This document shows positions 25,071 to 53,039 of a stretch of 64,000 bases of DNA, one piece after another. Location: positions 1-64,000 of the IMG/VR virus record IMGVR_UViG_3300042889_001503; one strand, given 5' to 3'. A program made the translations under genes and the position numbers. The notes under the pieces were generated by a model. It was not told the DNA's origin. It did not search any database and was given only the letters and a program-made list of their open reading frames with translations. Each line of letters opens with the position of its first letter. Position 1 is the first letter of the stretch.

Positions 25071-26957
25071 ATGGAAAATAATGAAAATAATGATTTAACG
25101 GTTTGGCAAAGGTTATCAAGAGCCTTTGGACCAAACGCGTTATTAAATCAAGACTACCCAACATATAAGTTAGATAAGAAAGAGTTGTTAAAGACAACAT
25201 CACAAGCGGAATATGAAAGAGAAAAATTACAAGCTCAACAAACATATTACCTATCTAACCAATGGACTAAGATTGAAAGTAATCTATACACTCAAGCAGT
25301 TTATTATGAACCAACTCGTTTGGCTTCATTTTACGATTATGAATCTATGGAATACACCCCTGAGATATCAGCGGCATTAGACATCTATGGTGAAGAATCA
25401 ACAACTGTTGATGAGAATGGATATATGTTACAAATTTATTCTGAATCAAAAAGAATAAAATCTATACTAGCCGATTTATTCAATAACGTATTAGACGTTA
25501 ATACGAATTTAACTATGTGGACAAGAAATACTTGTAAGTATGGTGATAACTTTGTTTATTTAAAATTAGATTCAGATAAAGGTATTGTTGGTTGTATGCA
25601 ATTACCAAACATTGAAATAGAACGTTTGGAAAGAGGTATGGCAGCAAAATCTGCAACTATAGATGAACCTGCAGAACACAAAGGATTAAGATTTAAGTGG
25701 AAGGCAAAAGATATGGAGTTTAACTCTTGGGAAGTTGCCCACTTCCGTTTATTAGGTGACGATAGAAAACTTCCATACGGAACGTCAATGTTAGAAAAAG
25801 CAAGACGTATTTGGAAACAATTATTATTATCGGAAGATGCGATGTTAATTTATAGAACTTCAAGAGCACCGGAAAGACGTGTGTTCAAAGTATTCGTTGG
25901 TAATATGGATGATAAAGATGTTGAGGCTTACGTACAACGTGTTGCAAACAAATTTAAACGTGACCAAGTTGTTGATGCTAAAACAGGTAATGTCGATATG
26001 AGATTCAACCAAATGGCTGTTGACCAAGATTACTTTATTCCTGTTAGAGACCCAGCGGCGGCATCACCAATTGATACGTTACCGGGAGCAACAAACTTAT
26101 CTGAAATTGCCGATATAGAATATATCCAAAAGAAATTATTAACCGCTCTTCGTGTTCCTAAAGCATTTTTAGGATTTGAAGAAACTGCCGGTGATGGTAA
26201 GAATTTATCATTACAGGATATTCGTTTTGCAAGAACAATCAATAAGATTCAAAAATCAATGATTGCCGAATTAAATAAAATTGCAATCATTCATTTATTC
26301 TTATTAGGGTTTGAAGATGAGTTATCTAACTTTACGTTAGGACTAACCAATCCATCATCCCAAGCAGATTTATTAAAGAATGACCTTTGGAAAGAAAAAA
26401 TTGCATTATACCAACAAGCCGTTGCGGCAATTGCGGGTATTGCTCCGGTATCTGTATCGTGGGCTAAGAAACATATTTTAGGATTCTCTGATGAGGAAAT
26501 CAAACTTGATTTACAACAACAAAGAATTGAGATGGCTGTCGGAGCTGAATTAACAAATACGGCAACTATCATAACACATACAGGTATCTTCGATAATATC
26601 GATAAATTATATGGTAACCCTGCATCCGGAGCAACTGCCGGTGGTGCGGCACCATCATCCCCACCACCACCGGGAGGTGGAGGAGGTTTCGGCGGAGGTG
26701 GAGACTTAGGTGGAGGAATGGAAGATTTAGGTGGACCTGAACCAGGACCTGAACCGGGTGGACCTGAACCGGGTGGAGCCCCTGAGGCGGCAGCTCCCGA
26801 AGCAGAAGTAACTCCTGAATCATTTAATAGAGATAATTTAAAAATATTGGTAGAAAGAAGTAATATGACAGAAGATGATTCATACATTGATTTATCCAAA
26901 GGTGGAAACTCTTTAGGAGAAATTGAAGCTCAATTAGGTAAACTTCTAAAAGATTAG
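25071..26957 (+). CDS. portal protein (T4 gp20-like)
   Basis: LLLSEDAMLIYRTSRAPERRVFKVFVGNM, DYFIP, IDTLPG, YIQKKLLTALRVP; G/P-rich tail. Confidence 0.92.
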   Translation: MENNENNDLTVWQRLSRAFGPNALLNQDYPTYKLDKKELLKTTSQAEYEREKLQAQQTYYLSNQWTKIESNLYTQAVYYEPTRLASFYDYESMEYTPEISAALDIYGEESTTVDENGYMLQIYSESKRIKSILADLFNNVLDVNTNLTMWTRNTCKYGDNFVYLKLDSDKGIVGCMQLPNIEIERLERGMAAKSATIDEPAEHKGLRFKWKAKDMEFNSWEVAHFRLLGDDRKLPYGTSMLEKARRIWKQLLLSEDAMLIYRTSRAPERRVFKVFVGNMDDKDVEAYVQRVANKFKRDQVVDAKTGNVDMRFNQMAVDQDYFIPVRDPAAASPIDTLPGATNLSEIADIEYIQKKLLTALRVPKAFLGFEETAGDGKNLSLQDIRFARTINKIQKSMIAELNKIAIIHLFLLGFEDELSNFTLGLTNPSSQADLLKNDLWKEKIALYQQAVAAIAGIAPVSVSWAKKHILGFSDEEIKLDLQQQRIEMAVGAELTNTATIITHTGIFDNIDKLYGNPASGATAGGAAPSSPPPPGGGGGFGGGGDLGGGMEDLGGPEPGPEPGGPEPGGAPEAAAPEAEVTPESFNRDNLKILVERSNMTEDDSYIDLSKGGNSLGEIEAQLGKLLKD

Positions 26958-26979
26958 ATATTTATAAATAAAAAAACTT

Positions 26980-27696
26980 ATGAACTTCGGTATATTAAAA
27001 ACAAAAATAGAAAGAGTGTTGTTAGAATCATACGCTAACGACACATTTAAAGACGAAATAAAAAATTTCAAAAAATATGTTTTAGAAAACAAAAACATAA
27101 GTAAATTATTTTATTTATACGATGAATTAAATTCTCCAAAAGCATTAAGTGAATCTTACGCCAGAGAGTTTATTAACGAAAGTATTAAAATGTATGAGAA
27201 CACAATCAATAAAATCAAGCAATCTGATTTAAATAAAATAAAATCTTGGGTTGGTAATAAACAGATAGAGAATCAATATGAGACTATCGATACGTTGTTT
27301 TCTTCAGATATATTAACGATTGAATCTAAAATTAAATGTAGAAACATTCTGTCAGAATCTCTTAGAAAATTACCGGTGGTGAAAACAGAAGGGATTGATT
27401 TACCGTTAACAACAATGGTAAGTGTTGCAAACAAAACTATTAAAAGTTATATTGATGGTTTAACTGAATCTGACAAAAAAGAATTAATGTCTTTATTGTC
27501 TGAAGATGATTCAACATTGAATGAAAAATACGTTACACTTAAAGAAGGTGTAGTTACGAAACTAACGGAAATGAAGAATGCTAGCACTGATTCAACAATG
27601 CAAATAAGAATTGAGGATACTATCTCAAAAGTAATTTCTGAAAAATACGACAAACTTACGTACTTCAAACTTAAAAACCTTAAAGAAAATCTTTAA
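26980..27696 (+). CDS. hypothetical head-module protein
   Basis: ORF after the portal gene, with TATTTATAAATA upstream. Confidence 0.75.
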   Translation: MNFGILKTKIERVLLESYANDTFKDEIKNFKKYVLENKNISKLFYLYDELNSPKALSESYAREFINESIKMYENTINKIKQSDLNKIKSWVGNKQIENQYETIDTLFSSDILTIESKIKCRNILSESLRKLPVVKTEGIDLPLTTMVSVANKTIKSYIDGLTESDKKELMSLLSEDDSTLNEKYVTLKEGVVTKLTEMKNASTDSTMQIRIEDTISKVISEKYDKLTYFKLKNLKENL

Positions 27697-27887
27697 TTAT
27701 CGTCTGATTTAAATTTTTTCTGAACATACTTAGCTTTTGAAAGACCATCACGTTTAATTACTGATGGTTTTTTAAATTCTTTTCGTTTTGATAATTCAGA
27801 GCTTTGACGGGTTTTAATTACTTTACTTTTATAGAGTTTTAGAGCTTTCTCAATCGTAATGTGATTATTTAATTTTACTATTAGCAT
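27693..27887 (-). CDS. rpsU: ribosomal protein bS21
   Basis: MLIVKL....IEKALK.YK.KV.KT.Q..EL..RKEF.KPSV.KR, a Bacteroidetes-type bS21 pattern. Confidence 0.85.
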   Translation of the reverse strand: MLIVKLNNHITIEKALKLYKSKVIKTRQSSELSKRKEFKKPSVIKRDGLSKAKYVQKKFKSDDN

Positions 27888-27890
27888 ATA

Positions 27891-27910
27891 CTACATATAT
27901 CTCCCTCCTA
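27891..27910 (-). promoter_or_regulatory. AGGAGG motif plus ATG-TAG start-stop element upstream of bS21
   Basis: Minus strand TAGGAGG-GAGATAT-ATG-TAG-TAT-ATG(bS21). Confidence 0.45.
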
Positions 27911-27920
27911 CAAAAAAGTT

Positions 27921-27949
27921 TTGACATTACCCATAAAAACACCTATTAT
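27921..27949 (+). promoter_or_regulatory. possible sigma70-like promoter TTGACA-N17-TATTAT
   Basis: TTGACA at 27921-27926 and TATTAT at 27944-27949, upstream of the ORF at 27982. Confidence 0.4.
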
Positions 27950-27981
27950 TTTTAAAAATAAACAGGAAAATATGAAAATTA

Positions 27982-28452
27982 ATGAAAAAGGGAAAAACTT
28001 CTCTACTACACGGGTTCAAAACAGCGAAGATTGTTTATGGAACGGTAGACTCAATCAAACTTAAATCACTTTACTTAAACATCCAAACTTGGGTTGAACC
28101 AATATACGAATGTGATAATTGGACAAGAACAGTTCTTAACCTAAGTAGGAGTATTAAACACTCAATCTACGAGTCAATAAACAAAGATATATTCAACGAC
28201 AAATTTATTGTAGACTTAGATTTAAGGTCCAGCGGACTCAATCTAAACAAAAAATCGTTTATGAACCTTGAAATAAATTTTTATTTAATACAAGAAGATT
28301 TGGATTTCAAATGTAACGAAATAAAAGAATCATTACAACAAATAACAAAACAAATTTTTAAAGATAATTTTTTAGATAATGAAAATTTTAACTTTTATCT
28401 AACCAAAAACAGTAAAATCACAGAAGAATTGTTACAAACCGAGAATGTTTAA
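27982..28452 (+). CDS. hypothetical protein
   Basis: 156-aa ORF divergent from bS21. Confidence 0.75.
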   Translation: MKKGKTSLLHGFKTAKIVYGTVDSIKLKSLYLNIQTWVEPIYECDNWTRTVLNLSRSIKHSIYESINKDIFNDKFIVDLDLRSSGLNLNKKSFMNLEINFYLIQEDLDFKCNEIKESLQQITKQIFKDNFLDNENFNFYLTKNSKITEELLQTENV

Positions 28453-28475
28453 TATTTATAAATAAAACATTCAAA

Positions 28476-29201
28476 ATGAATTTAAGAATATTACAACCAA
28501 GTGAATCAGGGAAAGGTATATTAGTTGAATACGATGCTGGGTATATTAACCCAAATGATAATCGTAACGAAACATTAATTAGAGAATCTAGCGAAACTCT
28601 TGACCACACTAAACCAATTGAGTTTTATGCCGTATTACAAAAATATGATACCCCTAATAGAAATGGTAGATTATATCCTGAACGTATATTAAAAAGAGAG
28701 GCGGAGAATTATAAAAAAATGATTAAAAAGGGAACAGCCCTATCCGAGTTAAATCACCCGGAATCATCTTTAATCGATTTAGATAGAGTTTCTCACGCAA
28801 TCACCGAAGTATGGTGGGAAGGTAATGTCCTAATGGGTAAAATAAAACTACTTACATCACCGGGATATCACGAAAGTGGTATTTGTTCAACCAAAGGTGA
28901 CTTAGCAGCTAACTACCTAAGACAAGGAGTTACATTAGGTATCTCATCAAGAGGTGTAGGTTCCCTTAAAAAGATTGGTGAACAAAATGAAGTTCAAGAC
29001 GATTTTGAATTAATCTGTTTTGATTTAGTATCATCACCATCAACCCCGGGAGCGTATCTATTCTTAAATAAAGAGGATAAACAACTATACGATGAGAACT
29101 TAGAAGAAGAGAAAAAAATGAGTGTTGAGAGACACGTTGGTGATTCCGGAAATAAATCGCTTGACTTAATGAAAAAATTAAACGATTATTTGGGTTACTA
29201 A
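28476..29201 (+). CDS. prohead core protease (T4 gp21-like)
   Basis: NRNGRLYP, ELNHP, SHAI, GISSRGVGSL, DLVSSPSTPGAY. Confidence 0.92.
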   Translation: MNLRILQPSESGKGILVEYDAGYINPNDNRNETLIRESSETLDHTKPIEFYAVLQKYDTPNRNGRLYPERILKREAENYKKMIKKGTALSELNHPESSLIDLDRVSHAITEVWWEGNVLMGKIKLLTSPGYHESGICSTKGDLAANYLRQGVTLGISSRGVGSLKKIGEQNEVQDDFELICFDLVSSPSTPGAYLFLNKEDKQLYDENLEEEKKMSVERHVGDSGNKSLDLMKKLNDYLGY

Positions 29202-29215
29202 TAAAAAAAAACAAA

Positions 29216-29425
29216 ATGGAAGAAAAGTATTTTATCGCAAAAGTTACCTTGGACTCAGTTGATGAGGCATCAGGTAAGATTAAAAAATTAAGAGAAGAAA
29301 AATTAGTAAGTGGTTACAACCCTACTGATGTTGAGGCGAAAGTTACCAAAGTTTTTGAACATTATACAATGGAGTGGAGAATTACCGCTATTGTAGAAAG
29401 TAAAATTGATGAAGTAATTGAGTAG
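29216..29425 (+). CDS. small protein, DUF4494-like
   Basis: YFIAKV......GKIKKLREEKLV......VEAKV resembles Bacteroidetes DUF4494 (recognised from memory, not searched). Confidence 0.45.
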   Translation: MEEKYFIAKVTLDSVDEASGKIKKLREEKLVSGYNPTDVEAKVTKVFEHYTMEWRITAIVESKIDEVIE

Positions 29426-29446: not shown

Positions 29447-29474
29447 AAAAGAGGACATATAGTCCTCTTTTTTT
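29447..29474 (+). terminator. rho-independent terminator
   Basis: AAAAGAGGAC-ATATA-GTCCTCTTTT followed by a T run. Confidence 0.88.
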
Positions 29475-29592
29475 ATGCTTTTTATTTTTTGGAGATATTT
29501 ATCAATGTATAAAAACCTAACTCAATTTAAGTAAATTTTAAACTTTTTTTGAATTAGGAGATATTTATATATTAAAATAACAACAAAACGAA

Positions 29593-31104
29593 ATGGCAAA
29601 AGAAAAATCTTTAGTTGAAGAGGCTATCATCCAAATGAAAAACTTGGAAGAAGCGGTAGCTGAAAATGCAAAAGGAATACTTGCTTCTACAATGAAACAA
29701 GAAATCAAAGACCTAGTAAAAGAATCTCTAACTGAACAAGACGAGATTAACCCTGATGACGTTGAAGTGGATGAACCTATGGGTTCTGATGATATTGCCG
29801 ATATTGATATGGGTGATGATTCAGATGAAGAAGGTGATGAAATGGATACTGATGATACTGATGACGAAGAAGATATGGACTTTGGTGACGAAGAAGATAT
29901 GGACGACGAGGAAGACACTATTGACTTAACTGACGCAGACGATGAAGAAGTACTTAGAGTATTTCAACTTATGGGTCCGGATGACAACATTGTCGTAACA
30001 AAAGACGACAAAGGAAACACTCACCTTAAAGATGAGGAAACCGGTAAAGAGTATATGATTGTTGGTGAAAGTGAAGAAGAAGAATTTGAAATGTCTGAAG
30101 AATGGGACGAAGAACTTGAAGAAGATGAGATGGGTGACGAATCTATTGAATCAATCGTTGAGAGAATGTTCGGTTCTGATGATGAAGACGAAGACGAAGT
30201 GGAATTTGATTTTGAAGAGTTTGACGAATCTGATGATATGGACGATGAAGAAATCGTTTATGAAATCGAAATGGATGAAGAAGACGAAGAAGAATTAGGT
30301 GAAGAAGAAATGGATGATGAATCTATTACTGAAGCTAAAATGTCTATCAAACCAAAAGGTGTTGGGATGGGTAATCAATCAAAATTTAAATTTAACAAAT
30401 CACCTAATCAAGGAACAGGATTTAAAACTAAAATGAAAGAGGCTCCAAAATCTGTAGGAACAGGTAAAGCGAAATTCGAGTATAAAGAAGGTGAAAATTC
30501 AGGAACTAAATTAGGAACAAACAAAGTTGTTAAGAAAACTGAAACAAAAGAAGGTTCAACTAGAAAACCAATGGTTAAAAAAGTTGAAGGTAAAAAAGAA
30601 GAGACAAAAGAGGCTGTAAGAACTTTAGGTTCAGGGTCTAACTTTAGAAAAGGTGGTTTACCAAAACCAAGAGCTCATTCAAGTTTTAATACTGCTATCA
30701 AAGAAAGTAACACTAATTCAGAGTTACAAGTTCTTAGAGAAAAAAACGAAGAATACAGAAAAGCACTTAATGTTTTCAGAAGTAAATTAAACGAGGTTGC
30801 AATCTTCAATTCAAACTTGGCTTACGCTACACGTTTGTTCACTGAACATTCAACATCAAAACAAGAAAAAATTAACATTTTAAGAAGATTTGATGGTGTT
30901 GAAACTATCAAAGAATCTAAAAATCTATATCAGGTCGTTAAAAATGAATTATCCTCAGGAACTAAAACTCAAACTATGAACGAGTCAATTGAAAGAACAA
31001 TCGCAAAATCACCTTCTACAGGAGCGGTTAACTTACTTGAATCAAAAACATATGAGAATCCACAGTTCTTAAGAATGAAAGATTTAATGGCAAAAATAAA
31101 ATAA
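29593..31104 (+). CDS. prohead scaffold/core protein (gp22-like)
   Basis: Lies between protease and MCP; very acidic middle; coiled-coil NEVAIFNSNLAYATRLF; C-terminal FLRMKDLMAKIK. Confidence 0.8.
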   Translation: MAKEKSLVEEAIIQMKNLEEAVAENAKGILASTMKQEIKDLVKESLTEQDEINPDDVEVDEPMGSDDIADIDMGDDSDEEGDEMDTDDTDDEEDMDFGDEEDMDDEEDTIDLTDADDEEVLRVFQLMGPDDNIVVTKDDKGNTHLKDEETGKEYMIVGESEEEEFEMSEEWDEELEEDEMGDESIESIVERMFGSDDEDEDEVEFDFEEFDESDDMDDEEIVYEIEMDEEDEEELGEEEMDDESITEAKMSIKPKGVGMGNQSKFKFNKSPNQGTGFKTKMKEAPKSVGTGKAKFEYKEGENSGTKLGTNKVVKKTETKEGSTRKPMVKKVEGKKEETKEAVRTLGSGSNFRKGGLPKPRAHSSFNTAIKESNTNSELQVLREKNEEYRKALNVFRSKLNEVAIFNSNLAYATRLFTEHSTSKQEKINILRRFDGVETIKESKNLYQVVKNELSSGTKTQTMNESIERTIAKSPSTGAVNLLESKTYENPQFLRMKDLMAKIK

Positions 31105-44540: not shown

Positions 44541-45352
44541 TACGATTCTTGAGATTCGTATTTTATGGCTCTGTCATTAATAAAGAAAAACTCTTTTTTT
44601 GCTGACTCTACCCAAAATTTAACCTCGTCCGGGGAAATGATATCGTCACCATTTTTGTAATTCCAAAAAATAGAACCTTCACGTAAGTTCATATGTTTGT
44701 AACCAATTTTAGGAATTGTCATAATTCTTATTGAGTTGTATGTCATTCTTAAAAAGAATTCGTACCCAAAGGTTAATTTAAACGATGGTTTTAACAATCC
44801 ATAATCAATGAATGATTCTTTTTTAATTACTATCCCTGATAGTTGGAAATTTTGATAATCCATTAACGTTTCATTTGTTAAGATTCCCATTTCAGGTGTA
44901 AAATTTGCTGCGAATGTTGCCTCATTAGTGAAACCCGCAAAATTTGTGTTTTGGTCTACGTCAACAACTATTGGTAAAAATGCCGATACCTCAGGATATA
45001 TTTCAGAATATTTAAGAACGTTCTTAAACCAAATTGAAGAATATTCATCATCAAATTCAAACAATGAAACCCACGTTGATTTTGCACTTCTAACACCATA
45101 GTTAATTTGTGCCGAGTAATTTGGTTCTTTAGTCCACTCAACTTTAATTACCGGTAAATCACCAAAGTCAAAATCGTTTAAGTATTCAACTAAAGATGTT
45201 TCGTTAGTATGAACAATAACAAGTTCTTTTATTTCTGTTTTTTGTATTCTTAACGAATCGATAGCTTTTTTAAAGTATTCGTCAAAATCTCGTGCTTTAG
45301 ACGATTTAATCGGTAAGATAACCGATACATCAAATGTTTTAATTTCTTCCAT
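44540..45352 (-). CDS. glycosyltransferase, GT2/GT-A fold
   Basis: VSVILPI, NYGV, FEFDDEY. Confidence 0.75.
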   Translation of the reverse strand: MEEIKTFDVSVILPIKSSKARDFDEYFKKAIDSLRIQKTEIKELVIVHTNETSLVEYLNDFDFGDLPVIKVEWTKEPNYSAQINYGVRSAKSTWVSLFEFDDEYSSIWFKNVLKYSEIYPEVSAFLPIVVDVDQNTNFAGFTNEATFAANFTPEMGILTNETLMDYQNFQLSGIVIKKESFIDYGLLKPSFKLTFGYEFFLRMTYNSIRIMTIPKIGYKHMNLREGSIFWNYKNGDDIISPDEVKFWVESAKKEFFFINDRAIKYESQES

Positions 45353-45359
45353 ATTGTTC

Positions 45360-46415
45360 TTAAATTGTTTGTAGTTTAGATAATTGTTCAGTAAAAGATT
45401 CTTGTCTTGACGTTAAATATTTATCAAATAATTCAACAGATTCTTTTTCAAAAGATTCTTTAGTTGGTAATGAATCAACAGTTTTTTTCATTTGAATAAA
45501 TAAGTTTTCGTTTACATTATCCTCTAACCAATTTTGTAAATAATCGGCAATGAAGTCAACTAATTGTATTTTATTGTTAATCCATAAACCATTTTCCTCA
45601 CTCATCCATTCAGGAATTAAACTAGGAACTAAACCTAATACAGGTATTCCACATTTCATAGATTCTAATGGGTATGTTCCATAAGCACTTGTCTCATCAA
45701 TCCATACTGATAAACAAGATTCTTCCAACCCGGTTGAAAATTCTTTTTCTGTTAGACTTCTCATATCTCTGAAGGTTACCCATCTATATTGAGGAAATTT
45801 AATGTAGAATGTTTTAATTAAGTTAACCGTATCTCTTTGGTCTCTTGAATGTACTGTAATGATTGGTTTTGCGGGTAAGGTTTGAGGTTTAAAACTATCA
45901 GAAATGTATGGAGTTAAGATATCAAAAGATATGTTTCTCATAACACTTTCGATTTGTTCTTTTTGTTTGTTTGATGTTGTTATACATTTTAAAAATCCTA
46001 AGTCACTCCAAGATTGTCCTGGCTGTAACGTTTCTAACATATGGTCGTATGATTGACATAATACAATTTTACCACAAGGTAAATTGTTAACTTGAGACAT
46101 AACAAAACCGTATAGTTCCGGGATGATAATTAAGTCTTCCGGAGAAACATCTAAATTCTGACCCTCAATTGATTTATGTGGTATTACCATATATTCTTCA
46201 CCTAACCATTCAGATACACCAGTGTAATCAGGAGTTTCGTGTAAAATAATTGGGTTATACCCGGCGTTTAATAATGATAACGCTAATCTATAGATGTAAG
46301 CAATAGATGCTTTAGCGTTACCTTTGGTGTCTTGAGCAATAAGATAAATTCTAGATTTCTTATTTTTCATATTCTCAATAGACAATTCTAATTTTGTAAT
46401 TTGTTCTTGATTCAT
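45360..46415 (-). CDS. glycosyltransferase, GT-B-like
   Basis: SAYGTYPLESMKCGIPVLG motif. Confidence 0.7.
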   Translation of the reverse strand: MNQEQITKLELSIENMKNKKSRIYLIAQDTKGNAKASIAYIYRLALSLLNAGYNPIILHETPDYTGVSEWLGEEYMVIPHKSIEGQNLDVSPEDLIIIPELYGFVMSQVNNLPCGKIVLCQSYDHMLETLQPGQSWSDLGFLKCITTSNKQKEQIESVMRNISFDILTPYISDSFKPQTLPAKPIITVHSRDQRDTVNLIKTFYIKFPQYRWVTFRDMRSLTEKEFSTGLEESCLSVWIDETSAYGTYPLESMKCGIPVLGLVPSLIPEWMSEENGLWINNKIQLVDFIADYLQNWLEDNVNENLFIQMKKTVDSLPTKESFEKESVELFDKYLTSRQESFTEQLSKLQTI

Positions 46416-46416
46416 A

Positions 46417-46695
46417 TTATATTTTATTTAGTAAGTTTTTATAAAGTAGCGTGTTAAACGCAATTTTAAATGGTATTGATAAATTGTTAGTACCCTTTGC
46501 ACCTAATTGTTCATCAATCTCTTCCGGTTCGTCCATAATTATTTCCATCATTAATTTAACCGTTTCATATTTAATTATACTAATGTGGGTTGATTCTGTA
46601 ATACCTGAGGTAACAACTTTATCCCCTTTAATTTGAACGTAGTCATCTATTTTGTCTAAATCCAAATAATAATTTTCACCTAATACTTTTAACAT
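46417..46695 (-). CDS. hypothetical protein
   Basis: ORF within the operon. Confidence 0.7.
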   Translation of the reverse strand: MLKVLGENYYLDLDKIDDYVQIKGDKVVTSGITESTHISIIKYETVKLMMEIIMDEPEEIDEQLGAKGTNNLSIPFKIAFNTLLYKNLLNKI

Positions 46696-47291
46696 TATAT
46701 TATTTTTGTTAATTCAAATTCTAATTCTTTAATTGTTGTTATAGAATTGTCTAATTTGATATGTTTATTGTATTCCGTTTGATATTGTATGATAATTTTA
46801 TCATCCGGATGTTCTAATAATAAGGCGGGATTAGCCGTAAGTAAAACATCAATTTCGTCCCACATTGAATTTATTGTCATATTACTATAGAATTTTACTT
46901 TTTCTATCTGACAACCAAATTTTGATAAGAAGAATAACGATGATGGTTTTGACCTACCCATTTCATCAGACACAATTAATATGTCGTGATTATCTCTTAA
47001 ATTTACGTATATCTCATTTAAATCATTGAAGGTTGAATATTCAGTTGATTGAGAGTGTCCAAAAATTTCCATAGGAAACTCCTCATATAAAAATGAATAT
47101 AATTCTTCGTCCGTTTGGAACTTAAAATGATTTCTAAGATTTAAACTATCTACCGGTAGGGATATCTCATATTTAAAAGATTCTTCGTCTTCCAACCCCT
47201 CCGTCTTATCTATCATATATTTTTGATAGGTTTGTTCTATTTTATCTATTGTATTTCTTAATACTCCGTTAATCTCAATTGCTATTCTCAT
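46695..47291 (-). CDS. HAD-like 5'(3')-nucleotidase homolog with degenerate motif I
   Basis: MRIAIEINGVLRN in place of DxDGVL; C-terminal EYNK. Confidence 0.5.
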   Translation of the reverse strand: MRIAIEINGVLRNTIDKIEQTYQKYMIDKTEGLEDEESFKYEISLPVDSLNLRNHFKFQTDEELYSFLYEEFPMEIFGHSQSTEYSTFNDLNEIYVNLRDNHDILIVSDEMGRSKPSSLFFLSKFGCQIEKVKFYSNMTINSMWDEIDVLLTANPALLLEHPDDKIIIQYQTEYNKHIKLDNSITTIKELEFELTKII

Positions 47292-48036
47292 CCGGTTCGT
47301 TATCGTATTTACGTAATATCTTACTAATTAATGGGTTTCGTACAATATCGTTTTTATCTTTAAATTCAAACGTTGACACATAGTCATCATCTCTAAACTT
47401 TTCGATTGCGTCCCATAAACCACTGTGGGTTTTATTTTTATATTTGTCCGATTGTTCCACATCACCTGATATGAAGAATTTACTGTTAAACCCAATTCTT
47501 GTTAAAAGAAGTTTCATTTGACTTGGCGAGGCATTCTGACCTTCTTCAAATATTAGAATAGAATTATCAATATTCATACCTCTCATAAACGCTAATGCAA
47601 ATACTTCAATAACTTCAATCTCTTTAAGTTTTTCACGAGATTCTTTTCCAATAATTTTATTTAATAAATAATATGATGGAAAAATATATGGGTCTAATTT
47701 TTCTTCTACGTTACCGGGTAGTGAACCTAATTTTTCTTCGGCTTCAACCGCCGGTCTAACAATGATAATTTTCTCATAAGGAGTTTTTGGGTCTGATAAT
47801 AAATCAATTGCAGCTTTCATTGTTATGTAACTTTTACCAACGCCCGCTGGTCCGGAACAAACAGTAATTTCACTTTCAATTAGAGTATCGTAATACTTTT
47901 TTTGATTTACTGTTAAAAACTTTTCTTTAGTTTTTCTCCTGATGATTTGACCAATTAAATCTTTTTTACTTACCGGTTTACCGGTGACTTCCGGAGTCGG
48001 AGTTGTTGTTGGTTTTCTTTTTCTAGCTTCAGCCAT
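47275..48036 (-). CDS. phoH: PhoH-family ATPase
   Basis: GPAGVGKS, RPAVE, LGSLPG, AFMRG, EGQN, GDVEQSD, DIVRNPLI. Confidence 0.92.
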   Translation of the reverse strand: MAEARKRKPTTTPTPEVTGKPVSKKDLIGQIIRRKTKEKFLTVNQKKYYDTLIESEITVCSGPAGVGKSYITMKAAIDLLSDPKTPYEKIIIVRPAVEAEEKLGSLPGNVEEKLDPYIFPSYYLLNKIIGKESREKLKEIEVIEVFALAFMRGMNIDNSILIFEEGQNASPSQMKLLLTRIGFNSKFFISGDVEQSDKYKNKTHSGLWDAIEKFRDDDYVSTFEFKDKNDIVRNPLISKILRKYDNEPDENSN

Positions 48037-48043
48037 TTTTTAA

Positions 48044-49033
48044 TTATTGTTGTTTATAATATGTTAACCAATGTTCAATCATTTCGTCTAACATAGTTTC
48101 AAAGGTATAGTCGTGAGTCCATCCCGTTGCTTTTACTAATTTTGATGGGTCACCTTTTAAATTATGTAATTCTTCCGGTCTTAAAAACTTCTCATCTTGT
48201 TTCACATATAATTCCCAATCTAAATCTAATTTTCCAAAAACATACTCACATAGGTCTTGTACTGAATGTGATATCCCTGTTGCACATACAAAATCATCAG
48301 GTTTATCCAATTGAAGAATCTCCCACATTACTTTAACATAATCTTTAGCGTGTCCCCAATCTCGAGTAGCATCTAAGTTACCTAGTTTAAGTTCATTCGA
48401 TAATCCAAATTTAATTTTAACGGCCTCTTTACAGACTTTATTAGTTACAAAGTTAGTTCCTCTTCTTGGTGATTCGTGGTTGAATAATATTCCGTTTGAT
48501 ATGAACATACCATAAGAATTTCTATAGTTACGACAAATATTGTAACTAAAAACTTTGGCACATCCGTAAGGTGATACAGGGTTCAATGGTGTAGTTTCTC
48601 TTTGATATCCATCGGTATCAATTGAATTACCAAACATTTCTGATGATGACGCTTGATAAATTTTAATAGATGGGTCTAATAATTTAACCGACTCTAAAAC
48701 ATTTAAAGTTCCTATTCCAGTAACATTTGCGGTGTATAATGGTTGGTCAAATGATATTCTTACGTGTGACTGAGCGGCTAAATTATATATCTCAATTGGT
48801 TTAACCTCACTAATAACTCGTACTAATGATGATAAGTCAGTTAAATCAGCGTAATGTAATTTAACTTTATCATATACTTTATCCAATCTTGATGTTTGAT
48901 TTTCTGCTACTGAATTTCTTTTTAAAGTTCCGTGAACTTCATATCCTTTTTCTATTAAGAATTCTGCAAGATAAGAACCATCTTGACCATTAATCCCTGT
49001 AATTAAAGCAATTTTATTTTCTTGTGTTTTCAT
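48044..49033 (-). CDS. gmd: GDP-mannose 4,6-dehydratase
   Basis: ALITGINGQDGSYLAE, NLAAQSHV, YQASSSEMFG, SPYGCAK, NHESPRRG, RDWGHAKDYV. Confidence 0.95.
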   Translation of the reverse strand: MKTQENKIALITGINGQDGSYLAEFLIEKGYEVHGTLKRNSVAENQTSRLDKVYDKVKLHYADLTDLSSLVRVISEVKPIEIYNLAAQSHVRISFDQPLYTANVTGIGTLNVLESVKLLDPSIKIYQASSSEMFGNSIDTDGYQRETTPLNPVSPYGCAKVFSYNICRNYRNSYGMFISNGILFNHESPRRGTNFVTNKVCKEAVKIKFGLSNELKLGNLDATRDWGHAKDYVKVMWEILQLDKPDDFVCATGISHSVQDLCEYVFGKLDLDWELYVKQDEKFLRPEELHNLKGDPSKLVKATGWTHDYTFETMLDEMIEHWLTYYKQQ

Positions 49034-49916
49034 AATTTTCTATAAACCAATTTATTGTTTCTTTTAATCCCTGTTCAATTGGGGTAAATTCAAAATTAGG
49101 TAAATACGATTTTAATTTTGAATTATCCGATGGTTTTCTAAATTGACCATCAGGTTTTGTTTTGTCAAATATTACTTTCCCTTTAAAGTTAAACTCATTA
49201 ACTAATAAATCAACCAAATCTTTAATACTAATTTCATTTGAGTTACTGAATATAATAGGTTCTGATTCATTATAATTGTCTAAGGCCCATTCAGATAATT
49301 TTGCGATATCTTTAGAATATATAAATTCCCTTAATGGTGTTCCACTACCCCAAACAACAAAATCAGCGTTATCTCTTTGAGCGTTATACATTTTATGTAA
49401 TAACATAGGGATTACGTGACCGGTGTCTAATGAAAAATTATCATTTGGTCCGTAAATGTTTGTTGGGATTACTGACACATATTCTAACCCATATTGTTCC
49501 CTATAAGCTCTTATTTGAATATCAGCCATTCTTTTTGCGTATGCGTATGGGTAATTTGAAAAGTGAGGGGCTCCTAAGTGAATTTTTTTCTCAGTTATTG
49601 GGTATTCAATATTGTCCGGAAATACACAAGTTGATAAAAATGATACTAATTTTTTAACATTATTTTTTCTGGCCGATTCAATAACGTTAGTGTTAATCAT
49701 TATGTTATCGTAAAAAAACTCTCCTTTATAATTCATATTGGCACTAAGACCACCTACTTTACCGGCACAATGAATAACGTGAGTTGGTTTATGGTATTCA
49801 AACATTTTATCGGTTTCTTCAATATTTCTCAAATCATACTCTTTACCAATTTTTACATCAGAAGTAATGGAAGAACCAACTAAACCATTACCACCGGTTA
49901 CTAATAATTTTTTCAT
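49014..49916 (-). CDS. fcl: GDP-4-keto-6-deoxymannose epimerase/reductase (GDP-L-fucose synthase / ColC-like)
   Basis: GGNGLVG, AGKVGG, LSTCVFP, YAYAKR, PTNIYGPNDNF, WGSGTPLREF. Confidence 0.9.
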   Translation of the reverse strand: MKKLLVTGGNGLVGSSITSDVKIGKEYDLRNIEETDKMFEYHKPTHVIHCAGKVGGLSANMNYKGEFFYDNIMINTNVIESARKNNVKKLVSFLSTCVFPDNIEYPITEKKIHLGAPHFSNYPYAYAKRMADIQIRAYREQYGLEYVSVIPTNIYGPNDNFSLDTGHVIPMLLHKMYNAQRDNADFVVWGSGTPLREFIYSKDIAKLSEWALDNYNESEPIIFSNSNEISIKDLVDLLVNEFNFKGKVIFDKTKPDGQFRKPSDNSKLKSYLPNFEFTPIEQGLKETINWFIENYENTRK

Positions 49917-51064
49917 ATATTTTCGTTAACAATTTTAATTACTTTAGTTATTTCTTCTTCAGTCATTTGGTGATTGTTTGGTAAGTATAAACCATATTCG
50001 TGTACTAACTTTGAATTAGGTAATTCTTGTTTCCCATATCTTTCATACCAAAATGGGTGTTCGTTTATTGACCCACAAATTAATGGTCGACATTCGATAT
50101 CATTATTTTGTAATTCAGTTATCAATCTGTCAAGATTTTTAGTTATTATAGGATAAGAAAAATTTGACACATAGGAATTACTTGTTGGTTTAACCTCCCA
50201 AAAATCATTTTTGATACCTTCTTTATATCTTATGTAATTCTTATATCTAGATTCAACAATATGGTCTAATTTATCCATTTGTTGAATTCCGATAAACGCT
50301 TGTAAGTCAGTTGCTCTTAAATTAAACCCCGGGTAATAAAAGGTGTATAATGATTTAAAATCATTAACCTTATATTTTTCGCGTAATTCTTTTTGTTTCG
50401 ATAAAGGTAAATCTCTGTCCCACCCGTGCGACCTAATGGATAATAAAATATGATACAATTCTTCATTATCTGTTGATACCATACCACCTTCAATTGTTGA
50501 CATATGATGTCCAAAATAAAATGAAAAGGTTGATAAATCTCCAAAAGTTCCTAAATGTTTATCACCGTATTTTGAACCAATAGATTCACAAGTATCCTCA
50601 ATTAATAAAATATCATTTTCTTCACATAGCTCAATGATTTCTTTCATATGATTAGGAAAACCTAATACGTGAACTAATATAATTGCGGAAGGGTTTTCTT
50701 CTTTAATTAACGTTTTTAAATGGTTAATATCTAAACCTAAATTATCCTTATCACAATCACACATAATAGGCGTTAATCCTAATTGTATTGCCGGTGTCAC
50801 AGTAGTTACCCAAGAAACTGCTGGAACAATAATTTTATTATTTTTTAACTTACCGGATAGTATTAACGAATAAATCGCCGCTAAATTGGCTGAAGACCCG
50901 GAATTCACAAATACCGAATACTTACACCCTAACCATTTAGACCATAAGTCCTCAAAAGTTGTTGTTAATTCTCCTTTAGTTAATCTTGGATTGGTTTTTA
51001 ACCATTCTATTAATTTGGTGATGTCATCAAAATCAATAGTGTCCTTTACTAGTTTAATACTCAT
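49913..51064 (-). CDS. colD: ColD-like GDP-4-keto-6-deoxymannose 3-dehydratase (DegT/DnrJ family)
   Basis: NSGSSAN, VPAVSW, EDTCES, SFYFGHHMSTIEGG (His in place of the Schiff-base Lys), RSHGW.R, PGFNLR. Confidence 0.75.
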   Translation of the reverse strand: MSIKLVKDTIDFDDITKLIEWLKTNPRLTKGELTTTFEDLWSKWLGCKYSVFVNSGSSANLAAIYSLILSGKLKNNKIIVPAVSWVTTVTPAIQLGLTPIMCDCDKDNLGLDINHLKTLIKEENPSAIILVHVLGFPNHMKEIIELCEENDILLIEDTCESIGSKYGDKHLGTFGDLSTFSFYFGHHMSTIEGGMVSTDNEELYHILLSIRSHGWDRDLPLSKQKELREKYKVNDFKSLYTFYYPGFNLRATDLQAFIGIQQMDKLDHIVESRYKNYIRYKEGIKNDFWEVKPTSNSYVSNFSYPIITKNLDRLITELQNNDIECRPLICGSINEHPFWYERYGKQELPNSKLVHEYGLYLPNNHQMTEEEITKVIKIVNENI

Positions 51065-51833
51065 ATATGTCTTTAATTGTTAAGTTGATTAGGTCGTTAT
51101 AATCTATTGTTTTTTCGCAACTATAATAACCACCTCTTTTTATTTTTAAGTTATTGGATTCGTCGTATTCTATGTAATCTATAATGTTTTTATTTAATTT
51201 TGTAAAGATGTCCTCAATAAACTTTTGAACATTGATTAATTCACCTAAACCAACAATACAATCTTTATCGGCTTTTAATGAAACATCAACAATGTTTTTA
51301 GGGTGGGTTAAATCTCTATTAAAATTAATATCACCAATAGATATTTTTTTATCGTTCAGTATTGAATCAAATATTTTACCAAAGAGAAACCCTTCTTTTC
51401 TATAAACAGAATTAAAGTTAAATGGGTAGATTATTATTACGTTAGGGTAAACATCTCTGTTATGATTAATATAGTTACAGAGAATTTCTTTTGATTTAAT
51501 ATATGGTGAGTAATTATAGTTATACTCATCACTTAGGGAGACACACCCGTCGTATTTATTCCACAATTCTGATGTTGAATAAATGATGACCTTATTTGAG
51601 ATGTCTTTAAACTTATTAATAACTTCTAACGTATAATCAAAATTAGTTTTTATAAAAAACTCATCAGATTCATTTAAAAAAGTTCGTTGTTCCGCAAATA
51701 ATAAAAAAACCTTGTCATACTTTTTAGAACAAAGTGTTGCAAAATCTATGTTTCGGGACGATATTTTTTCATAATCATTGGGGAAATAATGACTTAACTG
51801 AGATGTATTCCCAATTACTAAATTACTCAACAC
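51054..51833 (-). CDS. NAD-dependent epimerase/dehydratase-like protein
   Basis: LVIGNTSQL, YSTSE, YIKSK (YxxxK), RDLTH. Confidence 0.65.
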   Translation of the reverse strand: MLSNLVIGNTSQLSHYFPNDYEKISSRNIDFATLCSKKYDKVFLLFAEQRTFLNESDEFFIKTNFDYTLEVINKFKDISNKVIIYSTSELWNKYDGCVSLSDEYNYNYSPYIKSKEILCNYINHNRDVYPNVIIIYPFNFNSVYRKEGFLFGKIFDSILNDKKISIGDINFNRDLTHPKNIVDVSLKADKDCIVGLGELINVQKFIEDIFTKLNKNIIDYIEYDESNNLKIKRGGYYSCEKTIDYNDLINLTIKDIYEY

Positions 51834-52167
51834 CTTTATATAATTTTACCGAATCCTCAATTAATGATTTACCTTGACTTATTGAATTATCAACCATCCG
51901 ATTTATTGCCTCAACATATTTAGGTCGTTTACTTTTAAAACAGATGTCAATTTTTTTCTTTAACACAGCAATTTCAGAGTCGGTTTTAGCATCACTAATG
52001 GCGTCTTCTAAATACCACATTCTACAATGTAATATGGATAATTTTTCAATCACCTCACCTAAATTATCGGTTTCAATGATATCATCAGGTAATTCAACAT
52101 TTTTATTTTTAGTTAAAATTTCTAATGTTTTATTTTTAATTATTTCTTCAATTTTTTCACCTATCAT
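51823..52167 (-). CDS. hypothetical protein, DUF4254-like
   Basis: LGEVIEKLSIL..RMWYLED. Confidence 0.45.
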   Translation of the reverse strand: MIGEKIEEIIKNKTLEILTKNKNVELPDDIIETDNLGEVIEKLSILHCRMWYLEDAISDAKTDSEIAVLKKKIDICFKSKRPKYVEAINRMVDNSISQGKSLIEDSVKLYKGVE

Positions 52168-52169
52168 AA

Positions 52170-53039
52170 TTATTTAATTTTTAAATTTATTTCATTTTGT
52201 ATTGTTGTTATCATATTAGGATAATTTAAATTATTTGACCATAAATTTTTATTTTTACCATCATAATAAAATATACCTTCAGATTCATTAAATGTGAATG
52301 AAATGAATGTTTTTTTATCGTCATTAAAATTTTCTTTAGTATGTGTAAAACAAAATGGTCCGGAAGCCCTTCCTACAATAATATCACAATGATTTGAAAT
52401 TAGACTAATTTGTAATAAATCAGGTAATGATTCTGTTATTTGTGGATATGTTGTAATAACATTAGAATTATTTTCATATAATTGATTAGTACTTAAAAAT
52501 AAACAATTAGGGTTATTTTCAGACAAATTTTCAACAATAGGTGTGAAACTAAAATTATGTGATTGACTTGAATTTACATTACCGTCACAAACTAAAATAA
52601 TTAAATCATATTTTAGTTTTAATTCTTTTATTTTGTTTACAATATTATCATGCGATTTTAAATTAGTATTAATCACAGAGGGTAAATACTTATTAAAATC
52701 ATTATCTAATTCAATATTATAGAAATCACAAATATCGGTAACTAATTTAAAATGATTAATAAATGAACAACCAGGAATAGGTTGGTGTGATACATAAATC
52801 ATTTGTTTTTGTCCTATCCAAGTATTCACAATATTATTTTCTAAATTTGTGTTGTGAATATCATAATTTCCGGGGATACCCACAATTTCATTAACTTCAG
52901 GTAAATCTTCAAATAATGGTGATTGTAGATTATGATAGTATGTAATGTTATAATGGTTTTTTAAAATATTAATTAATATTCTTGAGTAAAATATATCACC
53001 ATTGTGGAAATGATTATATAATGTTATATTGTTTTTCAT
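52170..53039 (-). CDS. putative glycosyltransferase (GT-B-like)
   Basis: HNGD N-terminal motif; CDIIVGRASGP; start taken as MKNNITLY. Confidence 0.55.
   Translation of the reverse strand: MKNNITLYNHFHNGDIFYSRILINILKNHYNITYYHNLQSPLFEDLPEVNEIVGIPGNYDIHNTNLENNIVNTWIGQKQMIYVSHQPIPGCSFINHFKLVTDICDFYNIELDNDFNKYLPSVINTNLKSHDNIVNKIKELKLKYDLIILVCDGNVNSSQSHNFSFTPIVENLSENNPNCLFLSTNQLYENNSNVITTYPQITESLPDLLQISLISNHCDIIVGRASGPFCFTHTKENFNDDKKTFISFTFNESEGIFYYDGKNKNLWSNNLNYPNMITTIQNEINLKIK

What the first reader, a model, noticed from the sequence alone, without database searches (positions are those of the whole stretch)
27885..27920. Strong SD-like motif and in-frame ATG-TAG start-stop immediately before phage bS21
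The minus strand reads TTTTTTG-TAGGAGG-GAGATAT-ATG-TAG-TAT-ATG(bS21). Most genes here have A-rich leaders with no SD. Established: Bacteroidetes ribosomes sequester the anti-SD using bS21, and flavobacterial rpsU is an exceptional SD-bearing, autoregulated gene. Here AGGAGG is spaced 7 nt from the start-stop ATG and 16 nt from the real start, suggesting a bS21-sensing switch acting by blocking or re-initiation. Alternative: GGAGATATATGT is a degenerate copy of the GGAGATATTTAT late motif seen at 29491 and 29557, so the SD would not be transcribed.
Basis: partly seen in the sequence, partly recalled or inferred. Interest (0 to 1): 0.6.

Follow-up and report, generated by a model that had tools for sequence, protein, structure and literature searches.

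The report
Unconserved SD-like hexamer before phage bS21
The AGGAGG and the ATG-TAG in front of this lake phage's ribosomal protein bS21 gene are really there, but related phages do not keep them, so they are most likely spacer sequence beside a conserved promoter-like box and not a bS21-sensing switch.

Summary
The letters are exactly as described: minus-strand AGGAGG at 27909-27904, ATG-TAG at 27896-27891, and the bS21 ATG at 27887-27885. bS21 is the only one of 199 ORFs in the 160-kb record with AGGAGG in its leader.

The phage belongs to the published freshwater Bacteroidota myovirus group that carries bS21 on the reverse strand of the structural module (PMC9723584).

Across 186 related loci (57 distinct upstream sequences):
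- AGGAGG survives in 8 variants.
- A start-stop occurs in about 18 variants and is not coupled to the SD.
- The hexamer changes as fast as or faster than 4-fold degenerate sites (8.5 against 5.5 parsimony changes per column).
- The adjacent GATATAT block is nearly invariant (1.3).

That block resembles the phage's own (G/A)ATATTTAT box. It sits 4 nt from the ATG, the same geometry as 20 other ORFs here, which predicts a leaderless or near-leaderless mRNA. The ATG-TA of the "start-stop" lies inside that box.

Genuine Bacteroidota rpsU leaders fetched as controls carry extended SDs, with the GGAGG core about 10 nt from the ATG. Here there are 6 bp, 16 nt away.

The transcription start was not mapped. 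A weak or relic SD function in this lineage cannot be excluded (about 10%).

The parts
27693..27887 (-). bS21 (rpsU-like) gene, 64 aa. It is the lone reverse-strand gene in the structural module.
   Evidence: PF01165 at 30.4 bits. 40-47% identical to Bacteroidota bS21 proteins, whose N-termini (MLII.../MIIV...) begin at this ATG. Tyr54 is present. The context matches PMC9723584.
27904..27909 (-). AGGAGG, an SD-like hexamer at -22..-17 from the bS21 ATG. It is an unconstrained spacer and possibly a relic.
   Evidence: Unique among the 199 ORF leaders. Present in 8 of 57 relatives' variants. Parsimony changes per column are 0,14,13,7,10,7 (mean 8.5) against 5.5 at 4-fold sites.
27891..27896 (-). 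ATG-TAG start-stop, in frame with bS21. It is a by-product of the conserved box.
   Evidence: ATG-TA lies inside GATATATGTA. The sixth base is the most variable in the block (13 changes). Relatives read TAG, TAA, TAT or TTA, or lack the ATG altogether (ATACTA, ATACAA).
27892..27901 (-). GATATATGTA, a conserved promoter-like box. Its 8-mer TATATGTA ends 4 nt before the bS21 ATG.
   Evidence: GATATAT shows 3,1,1,1,1,1,1 changes over 57 variants. It matches the phage box TATTTATA at 6 of 8 positions (GATATTTATA at 8 of 10). The box-to-ATG distance equals that of the 3-5-nt class.
27911..27917 (-). TTTTTTG tract upstream of the hexamer, mostly conserved. The same T-run-G plus GAGATAT layout occurs at 29485-29502 and 29544-29568.
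27921..27949 (+). Promoter-like TTGACA-N17-TATTAT for the divergent gene at 27982. It accounts for the conserved GTCAA seen on the minus strand.
   Evidence: 11 of 12 consensus matches. In relatives the hexamers and the spacer length are conserved while the spacer sequence varies freely. RNA contigs of that gene begin at 27966, 27980 and 27998.
27982..28452 (+). Divergent neighbour gene, 156 aa, no family match.
26980..27696 (+). Convergent neighbour gene, 238 aa, no family match. Its stop overlaps the bS21 stop by 4 nt (TTAA).
26957..26966 (+). GATATTTATA box upstream of the gene at 26980, used as a positive control for the box family.
   Evidence: GATATTTAT is invariant in all 16 relatives' variants while the leader varies.
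28451..28460 (+). AATATTTATA box upstream of the prohead protease gene at 28476, used as a positive control.
   Evidence: ATATTTAT is invariant in all 40 variants listed (42 distinct found).

Best explanation
The AGGAGG lies in a freely evolving 7-8-nt spacer. On one side is a T-run that borders the divergent gene's promoter. On the other is a conserved box, GATATATGTA, a variant of the phage's own (G/A)ATATTTAT promoter-like box. The 8-mer of that box ends 4 nt before the bS21 ATG. In Flavobacterium the sigma-A box occupies -12..-5, so this geometry puts the transcription start at or next to the A of the ATG. On this reading the bS21 mRNA is leaderless or nearly so, the AGGAGG and the ATG-TAG are not in the mRNA, and neither regulates translation. 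The ATG-TAG exists only because the box contains ATGTA. The AGGAGG may be a decaying relic of an ancestral sequence, or chance. Shown: non-conservation of the SD and the start-stop; strong conservation of the box; the shared geometry. Inferred: that the box is a promoter and that the mRNA is leaderless.
For: (1) Conservation. 186 related loci give 57 distinct upstream sequences. AGGAGG is in 8 and none reaches dG <= -13. Parsimony changes per column are 8.5 for the SD hexamer, 5.5 for 4-fold sites, 4.3 for third codon positions and 1.3 for GATATAT. (2) No coupling. Of the 8 AGGAGG variants, 3 have a start-stop and 5 have ATG-TAT/TTA-TAT-ATG. 3 variants (plus the 2 most divergent, which lack the box) have no upstream ATG, and 10 carry it out of frame. 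(3) The box family. TATTTAT is about 8-fold enriched in the sense orientation within 80 nt upstream of ORFs (58 hits). Box-to-ATG distances are bimodal at 3-5 and 12-19 nt. Host-type TTTG-N19-TAnnTTTG boxes show the same two classes. 20 ORFs fall in the 3-5-nt class. The box is invariant upstream of both flanking late genes in relatives. (4) The sigma-A box sits at -12..-5 in Flavobacterium psychrophilum (PMC9723704), so four intervening nt place +1 on the A of the ATG. (5) The bS21 proximal upstream region looks like the box class and not like a leader. Its A fraction is 0.33, against 0.32 for the box class and 0.54 for other ORFs. It has T at -3, -6 and -12. An ATG within 15 nt is present in 52 of 57 variants, against 7.5% of ORFs genome-wide. 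Bacteroidia disfavour nearby AUGs (PMC13000457). (6) The layout T-run-G, short spacer, GAGATAT recurs at the two boxes before the gene at 29593. (7) The family's bS21 is transcribed late together with the structural genes (PMC9723584).
Against: No transcription start was mapped. The RNA-derived contigs available do not cover 27647-27965 at all. The box matches the consensus at only 6 of 8 positions and differs from it in the same way in all relatives, so it could be something other than a promoter. No T4 gp55-like late sigma was found in this record or in two complete relatives, so the factor that reads these boxes is unknown. The only AGGAGG leader of the genome stands before bS21, the one gene for which a host precedent exists (about 0.002 by chance). 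GTAGGAGGAA also appears in at least four separate clades of the tree, so it is probably ancestral and not a one-off. The two most divergent relatives (L153, L158) lack the box altogether and must use another promoter.
Confidence: 0.6

Rival explanations
1. The bS21 mRNA starts upstream of AGGAGG. 30S subunits that lack bS21 have a free anti-SD, dock on AGGAGG and load on the AUG 7 nt downstream. They terminate at once at UAG and re-initiate 3 nt further on at the bS21 AUG. Phage bS21 synthesis would then track the pool of bS21-free ribosomes.
For: This is the only AGGAGG leader among 199 ORFs, mirroring Flavobacteriales, where rpsU is the only SD gene (PMC9976891). The 7-nt spacing to the upstream AUG is canonical. 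A 7-nt AGGAGGU put into a tuf reporter responded to bS21 loss: over 2-fold with the C-terminal deletion and 40-70% on depletion. AGGAGG occurs in several clades.
Against: Kept in 8 of 57 variants, at a rate at or above neutral. The start-stop is not coupled to the SD and is often replaced by a sense codon, or the ATG is absent. Host elements need 9-13 consecutive bp, and single mismatches abolish initiation. Controls from Bacteroidota genomes give -16 to -22 kcal/mol with the GGAGG core about 10 nt from the ATG. Here the value is -12.5 by the same yardstick, at 16 nt. No RNA structure is evident (z = +1.06).
Confidence: 0.1
2. Relic in a leader. bS21 is transcribed from a promoter further upstream, for example near the invariant GTTTATT at 27957-27963(-). 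AGGAGG would then sit in the 5' UTR as a decaying remnant of the SD-bearing leader captured with a host rpsU. It would have no effect, or a negligible one, because replete Bacteroidia ribosomes ignore SDs.
For: GTAGGAGGAA is probably ancestral for much of the family and is mostly lost by G-to-A steps. Replete F. johnsoniae ribosomes are blind to SDs. The L153 and L158 relatives lack the proximal box yet keep GTTTATT.
Against: The position does not line up with host leaders. The hexamer ends 16 nt from the homologous start codon, against about 10 nt from the GGAGG core in hosts. GTTTATT equally fits the 5' UTR of the divergent gene. No RNA contig crosses the intergenic region.
Confidence: 0.15
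3. The conserved GATATAT...TATATG block is not a promoter. It would be an operator on the mRNA or the DNA, an AT palindrome that includes the start codon, bound by a phage or host factor. Candidates are the co-evolving neighbour protein or bS21 itself. The factor would set bS21 translation or transcription.
For: The block is conserved well beyond its neighbours and covers the start codon. It is self-complementary in most variants. PMC9723584 reports a neighbour gene that co-evolves with bS21.
Against: (AT)n is trivially self-complementary. The predicted hairpin is weak and the region folds no better than shuffles. No RegA-type repressor was found. Neither neighbour protein matches any family.
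Confidence: 0.15

Closest known systems
Extended-SD autoregulation of rpsU (bS21) in Flavobacteriales and other Bacteroidia (PMC7797042, PMC9976891, PMC13000457, PMC13000453)
   Same: An SD-like purine tract stands before a bS21 gene in an otherwise SD-less genome. The encoded bS21 keeps Tyr54, which helps to sequester the anti-SD.
   Different: 6 bp instead of 9-13. 16 nt from the start codon, against about 10 nt from the GGAGG core in the controls. Not conserved among close relatives. Probably upstream of the transcription start.
Freshwater Bacteroidota myoviruses with reverse-strand bS21 in the structural module (Chen et al. 2022, PMC9723584)
   Same: Same gene order (portal, hypothetical gene, bS21 on the opposite strand, hypothetical gene, prohead protease). 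Lake metagenome origin. bS21 with Tyr54. Late expression is reported for the family.
   Different: That paper does not discuss promoters, leaders or SDs. The upstream analysis here is additional.
Bacteroidota sigma-A promoters (TTTG at -33, TAnnTTTG at -12..-5) and T4-type late promoters (a single AT-rich 8-mer, TATAAATA), with leaderless mRNAs
   Same: A single AT-rich 8-mer sits a fixed short distance before the start codon. This phage has both host-type boxes and its own TATTTAT box, and many copies form the palindrome TATTTATAAATA, which contains TATAAATA. About 10% of ORFs have a box 3-5 nt from the ATG.
   Different: The bS21 box departs from the phage consensus at two positions in every relative. 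No gp55 homologue was detected. No start site was mapped.
Minimal start-stop ORFs (AUG-stop) that regulate downstream translation (from general knowledge: E. coli start-stops seen by ribosome profiling; plant NIP5;1 AUGUAA)
   Same: An AUG directly followed by a stop, close to and in frame with the main start.
   Different: Not conserved here. It is explained by a DNA box and probably not transcribed.

Membership tests
Ribosomal protein bS21 (PF01165), Bacteroidia type | Pfam domain above the gathering score | tested here: met
   30.4 bits against a cut-off of 27, residues 4-56. Also found by the genome search.
Ribosomal protein bS21 (PF01165), Bacteroidia type | Tyr54 near the C-terminus, which stacks on A1534 and redirects the 16S tail | tested here: met
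   Residue 54 of the translation is Y (KAKYVQ). Its role is described in PMC9976891 and PMC9723584.
Bacteroidia rpsU extended-SD autoregulatory element | [quoted passage not shown] | tested here: not met
0 of 57 relatives reach -13. Bacterial controls give -16 to -22.
Bacteroidia rpsU extended-SD autoregulatory element | SD a short, canonical distance upstream of the bS21 start codon | tested here: not met
   The hexamer ends at -17, so 16 nt intervene. In the controls the GGAGG core ends about 10 nt from the ATG. The 7-nt spacing applies only to the upstream ATG.
Bacteroidia rpsU extended-SD autoregulatory element | Conserved among related genomes | tested here: not met
   8 of 57 variants, evolving at a rate at or above 4-fold sites.
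Bacteroidia rpsU extended-SD autoregulatory element | The only strong SD in the genome | tested here: met
   The only AGGAGG leader among 199 ORFs.
Bacteroidia rpsU extended-SD autoregulatory element | The SD lies within the mRNA leader | not testable with these tools
   Only assembled RNA contigs were available, and none covers 27647-27965.
Reverse-strand bS21 phages of Chen et al. 2022 | bS21 on the opposite strand between hypothetical genes, with portal and prohead protease close by | tested here: met
   Portal_T4 at 25071-26957 and Peptidase_S77 at 28476-29201. Gene map.
Reverse-strand bS21 phages of Chen et al. 2022 | Bacteroidota host | tested here: inconclusive
   Indirect only. TTTG-N19-TAnnTTTG boxes stand before many ORFs. 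Best bacterial bS21 matches are 40-47% identical, in the phylum sampled around a Bacteroidota-labelled MAG. No CRISPR or host test was done.
Phage promoter-like box (G/A)ATATTTAT | Match to the consensus core | tested here: inconclusive
   TATATGTA against TATTTATA is 6 of 8. GATATATGTA against GATATTTATA is 8 of 10.
Phage promoter-like box (G/A)ATATTTAT | Conserved position and sequence in relatives, with variable flanks | tested here: met
   Controls at the genes at 26980 and 28476 are.
Phage promoter-like box (G/A)ATATTTAT | Transcripts start a few nt downstream | not testable with these tools
   No 5'-end data.
Regulatory start-stop uORF | AUG-stop conserved at a fixed place before the main ORF | tested here: not met
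   About 18 of 57 variants. Replaced by sense codons in 26, and absent or out of frame in the rest.

The most novel reading that the evidence does not exclude
In the lineages that keep AGGAGG 7 nt before an AUG, some bS21 mRNA is made from an upstream promoter and is engaged preferentially by 30S subunits that lack bS21. That AUG is a start-stop in this phage and a 3-codon N-terminal extension in others. The phage would then borrow the logic of the host's rpsU autoregulation to dose its own bS21. The rapid turnover of the hexamer would reflect tuning to different hosts and not neutrality.
Probability: 0.1. Interest if true: 0.75.

Novelty: not a real feature. Interest (0 to 1): 0.25.

Why it matters
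A conserved SD before a phage bS21 would have been the first sign that a phage plugs into the bS21/anti-SD autoregulatory circuit of Bacteroidia. It would also have made the idea of phage takeover by ribosomal-protein exchange directly testable. The comparative data argue against that here. What remains useful is practical. For this abundant lake phage family, bS21 probably has a box-proximal, leaderless-type start, like about one in ten genes of the phage. The only constrained upstream element is GATATAT, which is the sequence to mutate or to map.

Tried and rejected
- blastn of 27400-28500 against GenBank phages found no match.
- tblastn of bS21 found only huge-phage bS21 genes at 46-52% identity.
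- The genome-contig scan with bS21 returned one locus, a phage contig binned in a MAG.
- Pfam and PHROGs gave nothing for the two neighbour genes or for the genes at 29216 and 29593. PHROGs did not even recognise bS21.
- T4 gp55 as a query found nothing in this record or in four related records, two of them 100% complete. This is not evidence of absence for a distant homologue.
- A RegA family search was negative.
- The RNA fold of the putative leader is no more stable than shuffles.
- RNA runs: only assembled contigs from a roughly 95%-similar strain were available. They cover both neighbour genes but not bS21 or the intergenic region, so they say nothing about the bS21 start.
- A host-type promoter reading was rejected. 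TTTTTTG lies 11 nt from the box, and the host-type promoters of this phage use N19.
- Homology between the upstream ATG and the host start codon was rejected. Host N-termini begin at the downstream ATG.
- Huge phage LR756501 has AAAGGAGGATAA-ATG before its bS21. In a 50-kb sample, 7 of 90 ORFs there have GGAGG, so it is not a unique mark in that genome.

Full report
**Observation.**
The minus strand reads TTTTTTG-TAGGAGG-GAGATAT-ATG-TAG-TAT-ATG. The coordinates are AGGAGG 27909-27904, upstream ATG 27896-27894, TAG 27893-27891 and bS21 ATG 27887-27885. The ORF 27693-27887(-) encodes a 64-aa protein that passes the Pfam bS21 threshold and carries Tyr54.

The two GGAGATATTTAT copies at 29491 and 29557 exist.

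**Context.**
The window is part of a 159.9-kb IMG/VR virus record, 32.5% G+C and about 53% complete. A T4-type portal lies at 25071-26957 and a prohead protease at 28476-29201. bS21 is a single reverse-strand gene between two unannotatable genes.

This is the arrangement published for freshwater Bacteroidota phages, where bS21 is transcribed late with the structural genes (PMC9723584). More than 555 viral contigs encode close relatives.

**How unusual is the hexamer?**
I called 199 ORFs with a simple script. Only bS21 has AGGAGG between -25 and -4, and only 3 have GGAGG. Leaders are A-rich.

With 34 AGGAGG copies on both strands of the record, one falling in the leader of a pre-named gene has a chance of about 0.002. 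The coincidence with the host precedent is therefore real and needs an explanation.

**Comparative test.**
Three scans gave 186 usable loci with 57 distinct upstream sequences, at bS21 identity from 100% down to about 72%. I built a tree from 330 nt per locus and counted parsimony changes per column:

| Region | Changes per column |
|---|---|
| AGGAGG columns | 0, 14, 13, 7, 10, 7 (mean 8.5) |
| 4-fold degenerate sites of bS21 | mean 5.5 |
| Third codon positions | mean 4.3 |
| GATATAT | mean 1.3 |
| GTCAAAA | 0-1 |

- AGGAGG is present in 8 of 57 variants. No variant reaches -13 kcal/mol, and the median is -5.9.
The script counted 19, one of which is an unrelated ATGTAG further upstream.
- 26 variants have ATG followed by TAT or TTA, which would add three residues. 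3 variants have ATA instead of ATG, and 10 carry the ATG one base out of frame. The 2 most divergent variants lack the whole block.
- Of the 8 AGGAGG variants, 3 have the start-stop and 5 have the extension, so the two features are not coupled.
- The tree places GTAGGAGGAA in at least four clades. It is probably ancestral for much of the family and was lost repeatedly, mostly by G-to-A steps. That is what neutral decay looks like.

**What is conserved.**
1. GATATAT(G/A), followed by TAT-ATG.
2. GTCAAAA. On the plus strand this is the TTGAC of TTGACA-N17-TATTAT (27921-27949; 11 of 12 matches). Its hexamers and spacer length are kept while the spacer sequence varies. It is the promoter of the divergent gene at 27982. 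It also fits the Bacteroidota TTG(-33)/TAnnTTT(-7) pattern.
3. A T-run next to it.

The AGGAGG sits in the variable stretch between (1) and (3).

**Box families in the phage.**
TATTTAT occurs 58 times in the sense orientation within 80 nt upstream of ORFs, about 8-fold above the genome rate. The conserved core in relatives is (G/A)ATATTTAT, invariant before the genes at 26980 and 28476. Host-type TTTG-N19-TAnnTTTG boxes are also present.

For both types the distance from the 8-mer to the ATG is bimodal: 3-5 nt (20 ORFs) and about 12-20 nt. In Flavobacterium psychrophilum the sigma-A box lies at -12..-5 (PMC9723704). Four intervening nucleotides therefore put +1 on the A of the ATG. I infer that the short class is leaderless.

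bS21 has TATATGTA followed by 4 nt and then the ATG, which matches TATTTATA at 6 of 8 positions. Its last 12 upstream bases have the composition of the box class (A fraction 0.33) and not of leaders (0.54). It lacks A at -3, -6 and -12. It carries an ATG 9 nt upstream in 52 of 57 variants, something rare before other ORFs (7.5%) and disfavoured in Bacteroidia leaders.

The layout of T-run-G, short spacer and GAGATAT is shared with the two boxes before the gene at 29593.

**Comparison with genuine elements.**
From 201 genomes of the phylum around a Bacteroidota-labelled MAG, 30 bS21 loci were read. Many show GAAAGGAGGTGT-like tracts with the GGAGG core about 10 nt before the ATG, downstream of a TAnnTTTG box. 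By the same energy yardstick they score -16 to -22 kcal/mol, against -12.5 for the window.

The literature states that the host mechanism needs 9-13 consecutive pairs and that single mismatches block initiation. A plain AGGAGGU reporter still gave a response of up to about 2-fold to bS21 loss. A weak effect is therefore physically possible if the hexamer is transcribed.

**RNA evidence.**
Four lake metatranscriptome runs hold a roughly 95%-similar strain, but only as assembled contigs. Contigs cover 27200-27646 and 27966-28327, and none covers 27647-27965. Nothing crosses the intergenic region, and bS21 itself is not covered. The transcription start remains unknown.

**Conclusion.**
The most likely reading (0.6) is that AGGAGG and ATG-TAG are not regulatory. 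The hexamer is unconstrained spacer, perhaps a relic, upstream of a conserved box that probably starts a leaderless bS21 mRNA. The start-stop is a by-product of that box.

The non-conservation part of this reading is shown. The promoter and leaderless parts are inferred.

The rivals are:
- a transcribed but inert relic (0.15);
- an operator role for the conserved block (0.15).

**Known or new.**
The phage family, the gene and its odd orientation are published. The host SD circuit is published. The proposed phage switch fails three of the five features that define the host element. I therefore rate the proposed element as not a real feature.

Two side observations may be worth a specialist's look: the unique, probably ancestral AGGAGG, and the apparent abundance of box-proximal (leaderless-type) genes in this phage.

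Noticed in passing
whole record G000; in the window e.g. 6508, 7079, 33104, 35526, 43765(-), 1532: 20 of 199 ORFs have a promoter-like 8-mer (TATTTATN or TAnnTTTG) ending 3-5 nt before the ATG. No boxes end at 0-2 or 6-7 nt. This suggests an unusually large leaderless gene class (about 10%) for a phage of Bacteroidota.
   Followed up: partly
window 27921-27949 (+): TTGACA-N17-TATTAT before the divergent gene. The hexamers and spacer length are conserved across relatives while the spacer sequence varies freely. It also fits the TTG(-33)/TAnnTTT(-7) pattern.
   Followed up: partly
window 27972-27984 (+): Two ATGs 10 nt apart, in different frames, are both conserved in all relatives at the start of the gene at 27982. 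The first opens a 30-codon ORF that overlaps the main start.
   Followed up: no
window 28443-28472 (+): An 8-bp inverted repeat (GAATGTTT ... AAACATTC) brackets the ATATTTAT box before the prohead protease gene and is conserved in relatives.
   Followed up: no
window 27693-27696: The stop codons of bS21 (-) and of the gene at 26980 (+) overlap in the palindrome TTAA. No terminator-like site was found between the convergent genes.
   Followed up: no
window 29448-29568 (+): A terminator-like hairpin with a T-tail is followed by two tandem GGAGATATTTAT boxes before the very acidic 503-aa gene at 29593. The first box is followed by a 9-codon mini-ORF.
   Followed up: no
window 26600-26900 (+), C-terminal part of the portal ORF: The T4-type portal carries a long Gly/Pro-rich low-complexity tail (GGGGGFGGGG, PEPGPEPGGPEPGG) after the Portal_T4 domain.
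   Followed up: no
L224/L227 (LR756501, 542927-543127): The bS21 gene of the 735-kb huge phage has AAAGGAGGATAA directly before its ATG. In a 50-kb sample, 7 of 90 ORFs there also have GGAGG, so it is not a unique mark. Three other huge-phage bS21 genes lack any SD.
   Followed up: partly
L189/L192 (CAZYEM010000401.1): A 2.8-kb contig with a phage-type bS21 (83-84% identical to the window's) is binned in a MAG labelled Bacteroides sp. The MAG also has its own bS21 on another contig. This is probably a phage contig in the bin, or a hint about the host.
   Followed up: partly
G000 about 45,000-53,000 (left of the window): Several spurious short ORFs there have tRNA-like upstream sequence (for example GGTTCGAGTCC), suggesting a tRNA gene cluster in the phage.
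   Followed up: no
L153, L158 (most divergent relatives): These lack both the T-run and the GATATAT box. GTCAAAA sits about 20 nt from the bS21 ATG and the leader is A-rich, so this branch must express bS21 differently.
   Followed up: no
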